From contig NC_133619.1 in NCBI RefSeq assembly GCF_048593235.1, positions 227,492,454 through 227,556,453 on the forward strand: a DNA stretch of 64,000 bases, given 5' to 3'. The stretch is from Sminthopsis crassicaudata (taxonomy: Eukaryota). Positions 13,615 through 21,615 of this stretch are shown piece by piece (position 1 is the stretch's first letter; the number at the start of each line of letters is the position of its first letter). The position numbers were made by a program, and so were the translations under genes. A model generated the notes under the pieces. It was not told the origin of the DNA. It saw only the letters and a list, made by a program, of their open reading frames with translations, and searched no databases.

Positions 13615-16318
13615 GCCAGAGAGAAAGAGATGGAGAGACAGGACAGAGGGAAAAAGAGGCAGAAAAAGCTCTAGCAAGTGTATGGGATAAGACATAGAGA
13701 CTGATAGGTAGAGTATTGGAGTGGGGTGGTATTTATGAGATTAATGTCAGAACTTTTCACCCTGCAACTGTCCACAATATTAATAACCAAAATGGATTTT
13801 AGAAGGCATTAAGGCAAAAGTGATTGAGCTACTGCTGGATGCTAATATTCCGTTCAAGAAAATTGGTTTTAGATAGTGAAGTGGCCACTTCCCCTATCCT
13901 CATCTTCTTCTTGTTATCTGAGATTGAAGAAAGGCATTTTTTTAAATTGTCTTATTTCTTTATAATACCTGACTTAATTGTACTTTAACACGAATTTACT
14001 CTAGATAAAAATGTGATCAATTATAGCTTATTTATTTGTGAATAGTGGATTGTAAATATGGAAACAGTGAATGGTGTTGGTATATATGCTAAAATGAATC
14101 ATCCATAAATTTGAATACTCATTGAGTGCCCAGGAGCATCATGAGATAAAATGATAATGATTTATTAATTGTTATAAATGTCTCAAAGTAGGTAAAGCTA
14201 GATTCGGAGATTTTGATTTCAAGTGAAAGCAGATTAGTTGCCCTTGCTAGCTGGTAGGAACTAGTCTGGCAAGTCATGCTTCCTTCTCCATTGTTAACCT
14301 GCTCTCATACGTGACAGAGAAATCTTGCAGGAGGGTGGAATCAAGAGCAATGACTAGAGGGTAGGTCATGCTGGGGGAGGATGGGGGTGAGACAGAGACA
14401 GCACAAAGGATCAAGATGGAATAGGTTATTAGAAAAGACAAGGTTTTAAGAAGTTGTTAAACTCTGGAAGCTTGGCTGGTCAATAAGGTAGAACAGCTTC
14501 AGAATAGCTGCTGACTGCTTGTAAACAATGGCAACAGACAGTCATGTAGTTCTAGACAAGTGGAGAGAGAATGGCTCATTTTAATTAAAGGCATCTAACA
14601 GCCTCTGAGTCAAAGAGGCAGAACTTCAGTGAAAGACCCTATAAAAAATAGCTCACCAACGTATTATGTGGGAATTAATCATGGAAAGTGACACAGTCAT
14701 TCATATAAACAGCAACAGTGTTAGCAACTTTATACATATGCAGACACTATATTTATATATAAATATATGCATATATGTAATAAATAGCCAGAATGTTTTA
14801 CATGTGGTTCAATGAATGCATATTAATAGATTATGTTGATTCATTATTATAAATTACCATTATAGAAACCAGAGCAAAATGCTTTGCAAACTCTTTAAAT
14901 ACCCTTAGTGCTGGATTTTCTATATCATTCTCTTCATTGAAAAAAATTAAATATATTTGTCTGGGAGATTCTGCAATATTTCCACATAATTGAGCATTTT
15001 TATTGCCCTTTCATTAAAGAATTGGCTTGAAAAGAGTAGCACATATTGAGGTCAATGAAGTGTAATAAAGTTCTAAAATATAATAATCTCTGCTGCTTTG
15101 GAGAAGATATATCAAAATTTTCATTTTTTAAATAAAATACACCATTGTAAAACTAGTTTCAATATAGAGAGGTGCTGCATATTGTTCAACTTATGAGATG
15201 ATAATTTACTTCTAAGATCGTTTTACTAATAAGTAATAGGTAAGAGCAATATAAAGGAATTAGATGAGACTACTGGTTGATAAATGACAGAGAAAATAAT
15301 TTAGGACTATAAATAGCACAAGTATCTCAGGCATAAAAAAGATTTATTTTATATAGAATGTATGAACTAGTCACTTTTACATTTTAACTCTTATAACCTA
15401 TAACATAGCACTAATCTTCTGGGCCGGTTTCAATCTCAAGAGCTTCACTCTAAAATAACCTCCTTTTTGAAGGGGGGCTCATATCAACATACAGGATTTC
15501 CTCTGGGAAATTCAAAATTTGGCCCATGCCTACATCTCCAAAAAAGAAAAAAATTCCCATGTTAGCCTTCAGGCAAAGAATATATCAACTATAGCACAGG
15601 ATTTATTAACTCTGACCAAAAAAAAAAAATGGACCTAAACCCATTAATGTTCAAACTAATTCTCCTTTCTCCTCCTTATTCTGGAGTCCTATTTGGTCCT
15701 TCAATCTTATAGTCAATAAAGAAGTATATGAATTAGTGGGATAAATATTTTAATTTTTATATGGTTTCATTTCATTTTGTGTTAGCAGTTGCCATCTCTA
15801 TGTATTACTACTCAATACTTGCTGACTCAGAGAGTCTGTCCTTGAACAGATGAAACTGGATTGAGATGGTTTCCTCATCTTTAACTAGTTTCCTGTCAAT
15901 TCAGTGCTGGACTTATTTTTTCTTTTGGGCCATTTATATGTCTTCCATTGCTTTCTTTGGTTATGTTTTGTTGTGGTTGAATGGAATGAATTCTTCAAAA
16001 GGCTTTACAGATTTATGTTCATCACCTGATCATATTTTAGTTGCTTTAATATCTTGTCTCCAAATTTAACAAAAAATAGTATATTGTTTTCCATAACATA
16101 TCAAGACTATTTTGGGTACAAAAATCAAATAATGGCCAATAATTCTTAAATGTCAACTACATACAAAAGGTGCCAAAATAAATACACAAAAGTCTAGAGA
16201 ATAAATATAATGCTTTGGGGTTTGCCTTCATTATTATATGTTGAATATTTTATAAATTTCATGGATTTCATTTAATCTAGCAGATAAGAATGCTTTGGCT
16301 TCGATAGAAAATGTCTAA

Positions 16319-16439
16319 GAGGCAGCTAGGTGGCACAGTGGATAGAGCACCAGCCCTGAAGTCAGGAAGACCTGAGTTCAAATGTTATCTCAGACCCTTA
16401 ACACCTCCTGGCTGTGTGACCCTGGGCAAGTAATTTAAT
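16319..16439 (+). mobile_element. WSINE1-type CORE-SINE running into an assembly gap
   Basis: ggcagctaggtggcacagtggatagagcaccagccctgaagtcaggaagacctgagttcaaat...ctgggcaagtaatttaat, then N. Confidence 0.92.
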
Positions 16440-16591
16440 NNNNNNNNNNNNNNNNNNNNNNNNNNNNNNNNNNNNNNNNNNNNNNNNNNNNNNNNNNNNN
16501 NNNNNNNNNNNNNNNNNNNNNNNNNNNNNNNNNNNNNNNNNNNNNNNNNNNNNNNNNNNNNNNNNNNNNNNNNNNNNNNNNNNNNNNNNNN
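16440..16591. other. Assembly gap (N run)
   Basis: Run of N bases. Confidence 1.
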
Positions 16592-17721
16592 AAAGCAGAC
16601 TTTAGGGAAATATCAGTACTCGTAGATATAAACTTAAATGAATCAAGAAGAGAAAAGAATACAAGGAAATATGCTTCTTAACACCTCAGTAACTGCTAGG
16701 GATGTTACTGTGGCTCTTGGTTTGGGGAAAGCAAGCAATTCAATTAAAGGATCATTCATGCTTATGCTGAAACAGGATCAGTCTTTCTGAAGGACAAGGG
16801 GAAAATAAAATTGAAAAAATGACAAAAAAATCTAAGGAATGACAAATTATTATTGTCAAAGAGTCCAATTATTCCAGATAACACAAACAAAGACCTTTAG
16901 GGAGATATGGAATCTGGAAGGACAGTTGCTGATTTTTTTTTTACAGTGTAGGATAAGCTACTTGAACTTGGAAGAATGGAAAGACTAGCACTACTCAAAA
17001 AGTCCCAGATGCTATCAGTTGCTATGAAGAAAAGAAAAATGCTTTTGAAGGGAAAAACAATACCAATAATGCAATATTGAAGATTGGGGGGAAAGTTCTT
17101 CTTTTGATGTTCTTCTTTTGTTTTCTTTTTTCAATACATCACTTAACAAATCCATTTTTTTTAAAGAAGTCCAGGTCAACTTCTAAAATCTGAGTAAGAT
17201 CTTAATTGGAGTAAAAGAATTTCATACTTTTAACTAGTTTTATCTTCAATGAAGAAATGCAGAATCATTGATATATTAAGAAGGACAATTTTTCTGAAAT
17301 AGAAATTTCCAAAAAGCAATAGACTAATACAATATGATCTTGTACTATATCATTTCATAAAAGTTTAAGAAATATATCCAAGAAATATAGGTAAATATAA
17401 TGAGATATACTTCAATGATCTGGGAACTAGCTTTGCTTAAAAGCCACTAAAAAGATACATGTTGAAATAAAGGTGATATTTGGAAAAAATGGATTTTTCA
17501 TCAAAGATGTATTTCATATTTCATATTAAAAAATATTCATGATGAAGAATTAATGAATCCTGTCAAAACCTTATGAACTCAATGCCAAATTATGTAAAAC
17601 AAGTGATCATAGTAAAAGTCATATTGTATATGAGAATTTTTCTAAAGAAATAAAAGTCTGTAAGGCTTTTAAGTTGATAAATGTATTTTATCCTGTCCAA
17701 GTTAATTTGCACATCAATGTA
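16592..17721 (+). mobile_element. Decayed Tc1-family (Tc1/mariner, DDE) DNA transposon with near full-length transposase pseudogene and probable 3' terminus
   Basis: Colinear, stop- and frameshift-riddled blocks: NTSVTARDVTVALGLGKAS (16680), RIIHAYAETGSVFLKDKGK (16748), RNDKLLLSKSPIIPDNTNKDL...TV*DKLLELGR...AMKKRK (16835-17038), EDW-KVL..D (17079-17108), IDILRR..KFPKSNRLIQYDLVLYH (17267-17353), G-TS...KPLK (17423-17452), SCQNLMNSMPNYVKQVIIVK (17558-17617). Followed by AATAAA at 17649 and a ...gcacatcaatg-TA end at 17719-17721. Confidence 0.8.
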
Positions 17722-20559
17722 CCACCAAAGTTGAAATTACCCAGAGTGGGAGACCATATTAGATGGGTAGAAAGGAAACCTACCCTCTGTTGATCACCAA
17801 CTGCCCCAAAGGCACATAGGATCCTACAGACATATAATCCCCTGCTAATGTTGAGCTTCCACCCATTTCCAACAAGTAGAAACAACAATAACAAAAACAA
17901 CAATAACTAGGGGTTGCAAATGATTCAACTATTGCTTCCCATTATCGGACAGTACACACACATGGGCAAGGGAAGAGTTTGCTCCTCTTTGCAGAGACAT
18001 TGTCACTAACTGTTCCTCTGCCCCTACTCCCATTTGGTATAAGCTCTCAGAATTATCTAAAACTCCAGTGCATCCACAGGCAGTTTTGTCATTTCCAGTG
18101 CTCTGACACTATTTTCTACCTCTGTGCCATCTCTGGAGCCCTGTTGTTTCTCCTCTCCTGAGGCCATATGGTTCTCTGATATGCATAGTTCCATAGAAGG
18201 GCCACCTGGTTATGTTGGCTTCCTTCCAGGGAGCTGTATGTCACACCATCTTCCCTCAGCCCATTTCAGCTCTGCTTCTCATATTGCAAAAGACCAAACC
18301 AAGGATTTAGCTCAGATATTAACTTCTTCAGCAATGAGGTGTTAAATGAGTGATAATTACCAGTGAATTTTTATCATTGAAGTTACCATTACTATAGGAG
18401 AAGGGGAGAGGGTTCAAAAGCATTCAAGATGAGGTCAAAACTAATTCACATTCTTTCAAAAACAAATGCCAGCGCTAGAAGAAAGGTATCAATAATAAAG
18501 AGTTAATCTTCTCAAGAGAATTTCACTTCTTTAAGTTAATAAAAGGGGAATCCAGAAGGGCTTCAACAAGTTTATCTTGGATTGATACCACACATTCATT
18601 TTGCATTGTTTTTAAACAAAAGTTTCTTTATTTGGTGAGAGAGACAGAAATTAAATTCTTGTGAAATGGTTTTATCTGTATAGGGAAATGCTATTTTATA
18701 GCAAAACTGTGTCCATTTAAAGCTTTGCTTCAATTTTTCACTGTTTAAGCTCAATAAATCTGAGTGCCAAGTCTCCAGATTTGTAAATGGCTATTTCAAA
18801 ATTCAAGCAGTGATTTCCAATTGAATAGAGACTAGGTAAGAGGCTAACTGTATAAAAAATTCTGTCTTTGAACAATTTCCCTGGTCTTCTGAGATTCATT
18901 GAAAGAGGATTTCATAGCCCTAGGAATGATATCATTTACATTATGCAGTTCAAAAATGCAACTATAGAGTTTTCTCATGTGATGTATTTTTAAAACAGAG
19001 ATTATTGGATTTCCATAGATAATTTATTTTCGTCCAGTAACAAAATCAAGCACTTAACATGGGTGCAGTTTAGAAAAGCATCCAACTATCTCTCCTGGAA
19101 ATAGTATTCCTTAAGTCTTCAGGGAAAAAATAATAAATTAATCCTGGCATCCATTTATATTGAGCTTAAATGTGTGGTATGTGTCCTCTCTGCATGTCAT
19201 CATGCCATTTGCAATCTTACTTTTTAAACATTTTCAGTATTCTTGAAGCTAAAAGCTCTGTCTTCTCAGCCTGTCTGAGGATTGGACCCAATTCTCAGGG
19301 TCTTCTCTTTCTTTTGTTCAGTGCTGTTCCCTAGAAGATTGTGATGTTCCTGGACTGGTAATGGGGTTAGTGTTACTAATCCCATGCTGCTCCATTCCTC
19401 CAAACTGTAGAGAGGAGAGGAAGATACCAGGAAGAGAGGAGGATACCAAACTGTAAATGGTTGCTGGAGAAACAAAATGCTACCAGCCTTTTCATTCTTT
19501 TTCAACCACTCTAACCTTGTAATTTGCACAGAACAAAGGATTATTATGGGTTAGGTTAAAAGATTAAACTTTTCAGTCACTAATGCTTACTATCTTATGA
19601 GACCTCTGGCTAAAAAGTTTAATCTTTTAACCATTATATTTCTTTATCCTATGTAAATTATAAGTCTCTCTCTCAGACTTAGTTTCTTCATCTGTAAAAT
19701 GGAGAACTTGAATTCATAGTCTTGAAAGTCATTTCCAGTTGTAAATGTATGAGCTTCTCATCTTCAGCACATTTCTTGTTTCTTTTTCCTTTTTAGGAAA
19801 TGAACTCTGATGATCTTTAATGTAATTAAGAAATATAATAAAAATAATGAAGTCAATTTTTAGCTATAATTCATATAAGAATAGAAAAAGAGATTCAGAG
19901 GAGAGTTCAAAGAGCAGATATGACTTTAACCTGAACATCCCTTACCTTCTCTGAGAAGATTGAGAGGAATACCTTCCTAACGATTAGCTAAAAGAAAATT
20001 TCATGGCCTTTGAGTGAAAGAACTGAAAGCTGATTGAACATTAGAATCATTGGTTGAATGAATGATCGAGAATTACAGTTTTCTACCAAAGAAGAGAGGC
20101 TTATCACTAGAGTACCATGTATTATGTAACCCTGACAATAGCTACATAGCTTAGGATTCCCTAGAGTAGAGATAAAATGTCTAGTAAAGTGCAATAAAGA
20201 GCAGTGCCTAGAAAAGAGCAGACCCCCCCAAAACAGTGGGATAACATCATCAGAAGAGATCAGCTCTACAATATGTGAGATATGAGTTCATAAAGAATTC
20301 ATTTCTTGTGCATTCACTTTTCCATGAGAGTGCCCTGAGTACAAATGTTCCTTATGCATATGCTTCATGTGTGATTTCCATGCCAAGCTTTCAATCTTCC
20401 ATTGAGAAAGTATCAGTGAGGAATTCTAGAAGTAAAAAAATAAGGGGAAAATATTAGTGAAAATTATATTTATGTTGTTATACCAATATTATAAACTATT
20501 ATAACTGAAAATTAAATTGCTTTCTCTGGGCTTTGTATACTCTTCAAAACAAATGTGAT

Positions 20560-21100
20560 CTCAAAGGATATGGACAGATAATTTTCAGATGAAAAAATTA
20601 AAACCATCTATAGTTATATGAAAAAATTCTTGGAATTATTTGTGATTAATGCAAATTAAAACAACTCACCTCATACTTATCAGAGTGGCTAAGATAATAG
20701 AAAAAGAGAATGATAAATGTTGGAAGGAATGTGGGAAAAATGGGACATTAATGCATTTTTTGGTGGAGTTTTAAACTGATCTAACCTTTCTGGAGAGCAA
20801 TTTGGAATTATGTACAAAAACTATGCAGACCCTTTGATCTAGCAGTGTTATTACTGGTACCTTGGTCCCCCAAGGATTTTACAAAGAAAGGAAAGGGATC
20901 CACATGTTCAAAAAAGTTTGAAGCAGCCTTTTTAATGGTGGCAAAGAATTGGAAAATGAGTAGATGCCCATCAAGGGGGAATGACAGAATAAGTTATGGC
21001 AAATGAAAGTAAATGGAATATTATTATTTTACAAAAAATGATTTTAGAAAGGTCTAAAAAGATTTACATGAACTGATTCTGAGTGAAGCAAACAGAACAG
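20560..21100 (+). mobile_element. L1 ORF2 C-terminal fragment (decayed)
   Basis: aatgcaaattaaaacaactc...gataaatgttggaaggaatgtggga...ctggagagcaatttggaa...ggaaagggatccacatgt; homologous to the other L1 copies in the window. Confidence 0.88.
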
Positions 21101-21270
21101 AGACAGTCAGACAGAGAGGGACGGAGAGACAGAGACAGATGGAGAGATAGAGAGGGACAGAGAGACAGACAGTCAGACAGAGAGGGACGGAGAGACAGAG
21201 ACAGATGGAGAGACAGACAAACAGACACAGACACACAAAGGCAAAGAAACACAGAGAGATATAGAGACAA
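21100..21270. repeat. AG/AGAC-rich tract containing two copies of a 66-bp-period unit
   Basis: acagtcagacagagagggacggagagacagagacagatggagaga starts at 21103 and again at 21169. Confidence 0.9.
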
Positions 21271-21289
21271 AGATTTAAAGCTCTGTCTA

Positions 21290-21615
21290 GTTCTAAATCC
21301 AGAGTTCTCTAATGGAAATTATTGCCTTCTCTTTTCTAGTATTTGGAAGGGAAAGATCTTCTGTAAATAAAGGAATAAGAGATTTAAGAAAAGAGTACAG
21401 AATAGAGCTGAAGTAGGTTATCAGGGGATCAATAAGGGGAAGATAAGAAAGTAACCGTTGGAAGGATGGTATTCTAGGAAAGACCTGGGAGACAGAGGTA
21501 ATAAAAGTCATGGTTAGGATGAAGACAAGAGATTACAATCAGAATTTCAGAGTTTATAAACATGGATATGGAGCATTTGTGGGTGATGACAAGATCAATG
21601 GCTCTACTATGTCTC
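21290..21615 (-). mobile_element. L2 fragment from the endonuclease-coding region
   Basis: Minus strand encodes RAIDLVITHKCSISMFINSEI and is homologous to 24430-24520 of the long + strand L2. Confidence 0.75.

What the first reader, a model, noticed from the sequence alone, without database searches (positions are those of the whole stretch)
16592..17721. Hidden near-full-length Tc1-type transposase fossil in a marsupial intron
Seen in sequence: about 1 kb (roughly 16620-17630) carries, in the correct order, decayed matches to every part of a Tc1 transposase. These are the first HTH (TSVTARDVTVALGLGKAS), the linker ETGSV..K.KG, the second HTH in one continuous frame over 16835-17038 (RND.LLLSKS...TNKDL...TV..KLLELGR...AMKKRK), the first catalytic D region (EDW.KVL..D, 17106), the second D region (FP....Q.DL...H, 17336), the SPDLNPIE-equivalent block (17423-17452) and the C-terminal CQNLMNSMPN.VKQVI..K. 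A poly(A) signal and a CANTG-TA-like end follow at 17715-17721. Established knowledge: mammalian Tc1/mariner elements are mostly mariner and Tigger/pogo, and true Tc1 (DD34E) elements are rare and mainly short non-autonomous copies. Inference: this is an autonomous-length copy of an ancient Tc1 family, possibly acquired horizontally, that may be under-annotated in marsupials. The D-to-E spacing reads 37 residues as it stands, but indels make it unreliable. The 5' TIR was not identified and may lie in the gap at 16440-16591.
Basis: partly seen in the sequence, partly recalled or inferred. Interest (0 to 1): 0.75.

Follow-up and report, generated by a model that had tools for sequence, protein, structure and literature searches.

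The report
Decayed Tc1-type transposon gene fossil
About 1 kb of AT-rich non-coding DNA is most likely the dead, heavily mutated remnant of a Tc1-type cut-and-paste transposon gene, an ordinary kind of genomic fossil in which only the two ends of the gene can still be recognised statistically.

Summary
I tested them against two profiles of real Tc1 transposases that I fetched with the tools.

- **C-terminal block (17552-17608, +):** it is the single best hit of the whole 64-kb window in six frames (hmmsearch E = 0.04-0.05; the next hit is E > 4).
- **N-terminal block (16674-16783):** this first helix-turn-helix plus "RIIHAYAETGSV" ranks 5th to 26th of 1126 tiles. It lies on the same strand, in the right order and at the right distance from the C-terminal block.
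- **Whole-length alignment:** a frameshift-tolerant alignment lays profile positions 6-343 on 16631-17631 at 44-46 bits. Shuffles give 22-23 ± 3.4 (0 of 350 reach it) and the best natural tile gives 35-39.
- **The middle:** the second HTH, both catalytic D regions and the SPDLNPIE block are not above chance on their own.

Pfam, PDB and tblastn searches of the inter-stop pieces find nothing significant.

Verdict: a near-full-length Tc1-like transposase fossil with about 15 frameshifts and 16 stops, evolving neutrally (confidence about 0.85). The DD34E spacing, the TIRs, horizontal transfer and under-annotation are all unsupported. One marsupial genome paper already reports the TcMar-Tc1 repeat class. 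Other first readers of this scan noted Tc1 fossils elsewhere in this genome; I did not check those.

The parts
16631..17631 (+). Remnant of a Tc1-type transposase coding region (about 333 codons). On the best path: 318 matched positions, 15 frameshifts, 16 stops, 25% identity to the profile consensus.
   Evidence: Frameshift-tolerant alignment to two Tc1 profiles. Score 44.4-46.5 bits against shuffles 22-23 +/- 3.4 (0/350) and natural tiles with maxima 35-39. Reversed DNA, complemented DNA, reverse complement and reversed profile all give 15-28 bits.
16674..16783 (+). First helix-turn-helix and linker: LLNTSVTARDVTVALGLGK..NSIK, one frameshift, then RIIHAYAETGSV (ETGSV is identical to the profile consensus).
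   Evidence: Sub-profile 1-60 ranks 26th (35-sequence profile) and 5th (95-sequence profile) of 1126 tiles at the expected place. Alignments.
16913..17041 (+). Putative second helix-turn-helix (SGRTVADFFFTV*DKLLELGRMERLALLKKSQMLSVAMKKRKM), one frame with one stop.
   Evidence: Aligned to profile positions about 95-132 in every full-length path. Not above chance alone: rank about 100-220.
17073..17100 (+). Putative first-D neighbourhood: NIEDW, a frameshift, then GKVL. The catalytic D itself is not recognisable.
   Evidence: Aligned to 'tvedW kkvi' of the profile. Not above chance alone.
17330..17353 (+). Putative second-D motif QYDLVLYH (Q.D....H spacing as in FQQDNDPKH of reference P0093).
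   Evidence: Not above chance alone (sub-profile 210-270).
17429..17452 (+). Not statistically recognisable.
   Evidence: One search shows the string. Sub-profile 265-315 ranks 484-604 of 1228.
17552..17631 (+). C-terminal hallmark: NESCQNLMNSMPNYVKQVI, one frameshift, then HSKSHIVY. It aligns to '..L..SMPrR..aVi kakGg.tkY', the end of Tc1 transposases.
   Evidence: Top hit of the whole window in hmmsearch with both profiles (E 0.049 and 0.037; next best 4.4 and 7.6). 27.5 bits against shuffles 15.3 +/- 1.8, max 23.7 (0/300). Rank 1 of about 1470 tiles. 12 of 18 residues identical to P0022.
17632..17721 (+). Possible 3' untranslated end of the element. The end point is not established.
   Evidence: A+T-rich block ends near 17740. 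Summed contig depth is 9-15x single copy in 17567-17717 and 1x from 17718 in both species. No terminal inverted repeat confirmed.
16320..16591 (+). High-copy SINE (16320-16439) running into the masked gap 16440-16591. It bounds the remnant on the 5' side, so the 5' end of the element is not readable.
   Evidence: depth in the millions for 16208-16509.

Best explanation
Window 16631-17631 (+) is the neutrally decaying remnant of the transposase gene of a Tc1-type (Tc1/mariner superfamily) cut-and-paste DNA transposon, preserved at about full coding length. When alive, the element would have encoded a roughly 340-aa protein. That protein has a bipartite helix-turn-helix DNA-binding domain that recognises the element's terminal inverted repeats, and an RNase-H-like DDE catalytic domain that excises the element and reinserts it at a TA dinucleotide (established knowledge of the family; inferred here, not shown). 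It inserted before organisms A and B diverged. It has since accumulated about 15 frameshifts and 16 stop codons, and a SINE inserted at or near its 5' end. It now has no coding capacity and shows no sign of constraint.
For: - **References.** 35 metagenomic ORFs carrying WPxxSPDLNPIE were fetched, and eight checked with Pfam were all Tc1 transposases by DDE_3, seven of them also by HTH_Tnp_Tc3_2. 95 representatives came from a 1.84-billion-protein search.
- **C-terminal block.** It is the best hit of the whole window in six frames with both profiles, E 0.049 and 0.037. Against shuffles it scores z 6.4-7.0, and it is rank 1 of about 1470 tiles.
- **N-terminal block.** It ranks 5-26 of 1126 tiles. 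It lies 807 nt upstream of the C-terminal block, where the profile predicts about 825 nt.
- **Full-length collinear path.** 44-46 bits against full shuffles 22-23 +/- 3.4 (0/350) and natural tiles at z 6.1-6.5.
- **Partial shuffles.** With the C-terminus kept and the rest shuffled, 0/200 and 5/150 reach the real score. With both ends kept and the middle shuffled, 0-12 of 150 do.
- **Single references.** P0093 scores 67.0 against shuffles 35.4 +/- 5.2 and a natural-tile maximum of 46. P0022 scores 49.5 against 25.3 +/- 3.7. 25 of 95 references have z > 2.
- **Direction controls.** Reversed, complemented and reverse-complemented DNA and the reversed profile give 15-30.
- **Mariner control.** Three mariner sequences (Pfam Transposase_1) give z -0.7 to 0.4.
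- **Related species.** It holds the 3' end and flanks at 5.6-7.6% difference, and the element is no better conserved than its flanks.
Against: - No standard tool gives a significant hit. Pfam finds nothing on 19 inter-stop pieces of both strands. PDB phmmer, the ESM Atlas and tblastn with 35 Tc1 proteins (best E 0.6 in the region) also find nothing significant.
- The window-wide E-value of the best block is only about 0.04.
- The central 250 codons, including all three catalytic residues and the SPDLNPIE motif, are not above chance alone.
- Significance of the upstream part depends on gap parameters: z is 1.7-2.2 with cheap gap extension.
- With a decayed-codon model, the N-terminal half is only z about 2 against natural tiles.
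- My alignment scores come from a home-made dynamic programme, calibrated only by shuffles and by tiles of this one window.
- No TIRs, TA duplication or second copy could be shown.
Confidence: 0.85

Rival explanations
1. Chance resemblance: A+T-rich non-coding DNA that happens to contain one good 19-residue match to the Tc1 C-terminus, plus weaker motif look-alikes that the reader's eye and a permissive aligner chain together.
For: The best block has a window-wide E of only 0.04. Pfam, PDB and tblastn give nothing significant. The middle segments rank no better than random tiles. Permissive parameters let natural tiles reach 35-45 bits. An unrelated spot (9057-9086) gives the window's best hit to the first-D sub-profile without any coherent neighbourhood.
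Against: Two independent segments stand out on the same strand, in the right order and within 2% of the expected spacing. The full path beats all 350 full shuffles, all 243 natural tiles and four direction controls. The middle adds score beyond shuffled middles. Several single references give z 5-8.
Confidence: 0.1
2. A fossil of another branch of the IS630-Tc1-mariner group (mariner, Tc2, pogo/Tigger, or a DD3xE/D sibling family) rather than Tc1 in the narrow DD34E sense.
For: The catalytic triad and its spacing cannot be read. Only general Tc1-like references of unknown hosts were available, and the best-matching ones are metagenomic or fungal. Sibling families such as DD35E-DD38E share the same end motifs (established knowledge; PMC7731502 describes DD38E as a sibling of DD34E/Tc1).
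Against: The two recognisable blocks (ETGSV linker; L..SMP.R...VI..K...Y end) are consensus features of the HTH_Tnp_Tc3_2 + DDE_3 proteins used here. They are absent from the mariner C-termini seen, and the three mariner sequences give no signal (z -0.7 to 0.4).
Confidence: 0.04
3. An exapted or still functional derivative (regulatory element or domesticated gene fragment) rather than neutral junk.
For: None found. The 3' 150 nt has extra copies in both species, which could mean many things.
Against: No ORF longer than 50 aa, with 16 stops and 15 frameshifts on the path. Divergence from the related species within the element (7.6% over 17580-17882) is not lower than in the flanks (5.6-6.8%).
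Confidence: 0.01

Closest known systems
Tc1-like transposases (Pfam HTH_Tnp_Tc3_2 + DDE_3), e.g. the metagenomic representatives P0093 and P0022
   Same: Collinear over the whole protein length (positions 5-338 on 16634-17631). Shared ETGS linker after the first HTH, and a shared C-terminal E.C..L..SMPN.VK.VI...K...Y (12 of 18 identical to P0022).
   Different: The window copy is broken by about 15-17 frameshifts and 9-16 stops. Catalytic D, D, E and WPxxSPDLNPIE are not recognisable. Identity along an optimised path is only about 25-32%.
TcMar-Tc1 repeats annotated in marsupial genomes (Antechinus stuartii: 7,165 pieces, 0.05% of the genome; PMC9631953) and TcMar-Tc1 protein fossils in human (PMC9004415)
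   Same: Same class of object: old, dead Tc1-type DNA-transposon remnants in mammalian non-coding DNA.
   Different: I could not test whether this copy belongs to one of those annotated families, because no Dfam or Repbase library is available here.
Sleeping Beauty / fish Tc1-like elements
   Same: Same protein architecture. The best references carry the Pfam HTH_SB domain weakly.
   Different: The 3' end of the window element shows no above-chance similarity to the SB terminal repeat taken from PMC6446368 (score 8 against a window mean of 7.1 +/- 1.4).
mariner transposases (Pfam Transposase_1)
   Same: Same superfamily and same overall size.
   Different: Three mariner sequences give no signal on the region (z -0.7 to 0.4). 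Their C-termini (..RWQ..ID..G.Y) lack the SMP.R...VI motif that is the region's best match.

Membership tests
[quoted passage not shown] | N-terminal bipartite (paired-like) DNA-binding domain: HTH1, linker, HTH2 (Pfam HTH_Tnp_Tc3_2) | tested here: inconclusive
   HTH1 plus the ETGSV linker ranks 5-26 of 1126 tiles at the expected place. HTH2 ranks about 100-220, which is not above chance. Pfam finds nothing on the pieces.
[quoted passage not shown] | DDE_3 catalytic domain with a DD34E triad | tested here: inconclusive
   Sub-profiles 155-315 are at chance level. D at 17336 and a K at 17450 where the E would stand read as 37 residues apart, but several frameshifts lie between them, so the spacing is unreadable.
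[quoted passage not shown] | WPxxSPDLNPIE motif around the catalytic E | tested here: not met
   Only SFA*KPLK is present (2 of 8 identical). Sub-profile 265-315 ranks 484-604 of 1228. Decay could explain this.
[quoted passage not shown] | C-terminal L..SMPrR..aVi.akGg.tkY end of the protein (consensus of alignment A1 and of the 95-representative profile) | tested here: met
   17552-17631. hmmsearch E 0.037-0.049 window-wide, rank 1 of about 1470 tiles, 0/300 shuffles.
[quoted passage not shown] | Protein length of about 340 aa with conserved order and spacing of domains | tested here: met
   Profile 6-343 lies on 1001 nt (16631-17631). The N- and C-terminal blocks are 807 nt apart against about 825 expected.
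[quoted passage not shown] | Terminal inverted repeats (CAGT-type ends) flanked by a TA target-site duplication | tested here: inconclusive
   No convincing inverted repeat. The best partner for the 3' end is 15/18 at 15642-15659, without a TA beside it. No similarity to the SB terminal repeat. The 5' side is interrupted by a SINE and a masked gap.
mariner family (Pfam Transposase_1) | Similarity to mariner transposases | tested here: not met
   z -0.4, -0.7 and 0.4 for three mariner sequences. This is a small sample, and two of the three are partial.

The most novel reading that the evidence does not exclude
The copy belongs to an old Tc1 lineage of marsupials that is not yet in curated repeat libraries. 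Its 3'-terminal 150 nt survives in about ten further copies per genome in two species (possibly short non-autonomous derivatives). Genome-wide copies could then date an otherwise undocumented invasion of the marsupial or therian germ line.
Probability: 0.15. Interest if true: 0.3.

Novelty: already known. Interest (0 to 1): 0.12.

Why it matters
It matters little beyond annotation. If correct, it is one more dead DNA-transposon copy of a class that standard pipelines already report in a marsupial genome and that protein-fossil searches report in human. It is useful as a worked example of how far such a fossil can decay. About 25% identity to the family consensus remains, and Pfam, PDB and BLAST are all blind to it. 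Even so, the fossil remains detectable through two end motifs with conserved spacing. A family-level consensus could help date DNA-transposon activity in early marsupials, but nothing here suggests function, recent activity or horizontal transfer.

Tried and rejected
- **Pfam.** hmmscan of 19 inter-stop pieces on both strands at E up to 10 gave no family.
- **PDB.** phmmer against PDB with the 42-aa and 35-aa pieces gave nothing.
- **ESM Atlas.** The 42-aa piece gave no usable hit.
- **tblastn.** 35 Tc1 proteins against the window gave no significant HSP. The C-terminal block recurs in 7 of the top 40 at E 0.6-2.2.
- **Read-through searches.** None were sent to the tools, because they take no protein read through a stop.
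- **Window-wide amino-acid background.** Rejected, because G+C-rich tiles then score spuriously high.
- **Forward (summed) scoring.** It falls in the linear regime and is mostly driven by composition. It agrees only weakly.
- **Decayed-codon (HKY) emission model.** It picks out the N-terminal half at z 5.3-5.5 against shuffles, but only z about 2 against natural tiles.
- **Sleeping Beauty terminal-repeat similarity at the 3' end.** This was a lead from memory. Tested against a primer sequence from PMC6446368, it is no better than chance.
- **Inverted repeats around the element.** Only short A+T-rich pairs were found. The 15/18 candidate at 15642 is weak.
- **Second copy in the window.** None at the DNA level. 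The 'second candidate' at 8743-9306 is incoherent.
- **Lineage of the best references.** They are metagenomic or fungal and therefore uninformative.
- **Gentles et al. 2007 on opossum repeats.** The paper is not held.

Full report
**What is there.** Window 16592-17760 is 70% A+T and has no ORF longer than 50 aa on either strand. On its 5' side the stretch is bounded by the masked gap 16440-16591. A very high-copy SINE (16320-16439) runs into that gap. I left the gap as it is.

**Standard searches see nothing.** The tools here do not accept a translation that runs through stops, so I searched the inter-stop pieces apart.
- Pfam found no family for 10 + 9 pieces on both strands, even at E up to 10.
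- phmmer against PDB found nothing for the two best pieces.
- The ESM Atlas gave no usable hit.

**Getting references.**
- I scanned metagenome contigs for the DNA pattern encoding WPxxSPDLNPIE.
- From the resulting loci I took 35 full-length ORFs. Eight were checked with Pfam: all carry DDE_3 and seven also HTH_Tnp_Tc3_2, so they are real Tc1-type transposases.
- A profile of 30 of them was searched against 1.84 billion representative proteins.
- 95 single-domain representatives of 325-362 aa gave a second, deeper profile.

**Tests with unmodified tools.** hmmsearch of either profile was run against all 4043 six-frame inter-stop pieces of the 64-kb window. In both cases the top hit is the same: 17546-17650 (+), aligned to the last conserved block of the protein. 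The E-values are 0.049 and 0.037, and the next best pieces have E 4.4 and 7.6. tblastn with the 35 single proteins gives no significant HSP. The same block does recur at the correct query position in 7 of the 40 best HSPs.

**Frameshift-tolerant alignment.** I wrote a local profile-to-DNA dynamic programme that allows frameshifts and stops.
- With strict penalties it returns only the C-terminal block (NESCQNLMNSMPNYVKQVI). That block scores 27.5 bits against 15.3 ± 1.8 (max 23.7) for 300 dinucleotide shuffles, and against a maximum of 20.3 over 304 natural tiles of the window.
- With pseudogene-like penalties (gap open 4, gap extension 1, frameshift 3, stop -1 bits) it lays profile positions 6-335 (6-343 with the second profile) on 16631-17608 (17631).
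- That path scores 46.5 and 44.4 bits. Full shuffles give 22.2 ± 3.3 and 23.2 ± 3.6 (0 of 350 reach it). 243 natural tiles give 19.9 ± 4.1 and 20.8 ± 3.9, with maxima of 39.1 and 34.8.
- Reversed DNA, complemented DNA, the reverse complement and a reversed profile score 15-28 bits.
- The path has 318 matched positions, 15 frameshifts, 16 stops and 25% identity to the consensus.

**How much of the gene is really recognisable.** I cut the profile into seven parts and ranked every tile of the window on both strands.
- The C-terminal part is rank 1 of about 1470 tiles.
- The N-terminal part (HTH1 plus RIIHAYAETGSV) is rank 26 and rank 5 of 1126.
- The five parts between them (second HTH, first D, second D, SPDLNPIE) rank 98-604 of about 1100-1230. 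That is chance level.
- The two recognisable blocks are 807 nt apart, where the profile predicts about 825 nt. They lie on the same strand and in the right order.
- Keeping the C-terminus and shuffling everything upstream reaches the real score in 0/200 and 5/150 trials. With cheap gap extension it is 9/200 and 5/200.
- Keeping both ends and shuffling only 16801-17544 reaches it in 0, 2, 1, 12 and 0 of 150 trials for five references.
- The middle therefore contributes, but weakly. 'Decayed matches to every part' overstates what can be shown.

**Single references.** Among the 95 representatives, 25 have z > 2 against shuffles.
- P0093 scores 67.0 against shuffles 35.4 ± 5.2 and a natural-tile maximum of 46.
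- P0022 scores 49.5 against 25.3 ± 3.7. Twelve of 18 residues are identical in the C-terminal block.
- Both carry HTH_Tnp_Tc3_2 and DDE_3. DDE_3 ends before the C-terminal block, which explains why Pfam is blind to that block.
- Their sources are metagenomic, so they say nothing about lineage.

**Specificity.** Three mariner sequences were fetched from contaminated bacterial assemblies and confirmed as Pfam Transposase_1. They give z -0.4, -0.7 and 0.4, and their C-termini lack the SMP.R...VI motif. This is a small control, but it points to Tc1 rather than mariner.

**Ends, copies and age.**
- No terminal inverted repeat could be shown.
- A lead from memory, that the 3' end resembles the Sleeping Beauty terminal repeat, failed when tested against a published primer sequence.
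- The best partner for the 3' end is 15/18 at 15642-15659. It has no TA beside it, and the 5' leader it implies would be implausibly long.
- There is no second copy in the window.
- Contigs of public runs were laid at 80% likeness. Most of the element sits at about 1-3x single-copy depth, so there is no young multi-copy family.
- The bin 17567-17717 is at 9-15x in both species and drops to 1x from 17718.
- A related species (organism B) holds the 3' end and both flanks. The difference is 7.6% inside the element and 5.6-6.8% in the flanks. The insertion therefore predates that split and evolves neutrally.

**Context in the literature.** The Antechinus genome paper lists 7,165 TcMar-Tc1 pieces, 0.05% of the genome (PMC9631953). 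A protein-fossil survey lists TcMar-Tc1 fossils in human, four of them pre-amniote (PMC9004415). Two other first-reader notes in this scan report Tc1 fossils elsewhere in this genome; they are unchecked leads. I could not compare the copy with Dfam or Repbase.

**Verdict.** This is most likely (about 0.85) a dead, near-full-length Tc1-type transposase gene and an ordinary genomic fossil. DD34E membership, the TIRs and TA duplication, horizontal transfer, under-annotation, 'intron' and 'marsupial' were either not testable or not supported here.

Noticed in passing
window 16208-16509 (SINE readable at 16320-16439, then masked gap to 16591): Very high-copy SINE. Summed contig depth is in the millions in both species, and thousands of loose ends begin at 16321-16324. 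It bounds the 5' side of the Tc1-like remnant.
   Followed up: partly
window 17567-17717: Summed contig depth is about 9-15x single copy in organisms A and B and falls to 1x from 17718. The last 150 nt of the remnant therefore have paralogues at 80% likeness or more. These may be short derivatives sharing the element's 3' end.
   Followed up: no
window 9057-9086 (+): WSQEDWSTVLL is the window's rank-1 match to Tc1 profile positions 100-160 (the W..EDW..V block before the first catalytic D). The neighbourhood does not align coherently, so it is probably chance.
   Followed up: partly
window 15642-15659: CATTAATGTTCAAACTAA matches the reverse complement of 17700-17717 at 15 of 18 positions. It is a weak candidate for a 5' inverted-repeat partner (z about 3) with no TA beside it.
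   Followed up: partly
window 21076-21542 (+): The translation is a TERQRQ-like simple repeat. This low-complexity DNA inflates scores against K/E/R-rich protein profiles.
   Followed up: no
window 1-64000: The window has 40 ORFs of 75 aa or more. I scanned ten of them (99-149 aa) and none has a credible Pfam domain, so no exon was recognised and the 'intron' context could not be confirmed.
   Followed up: partly
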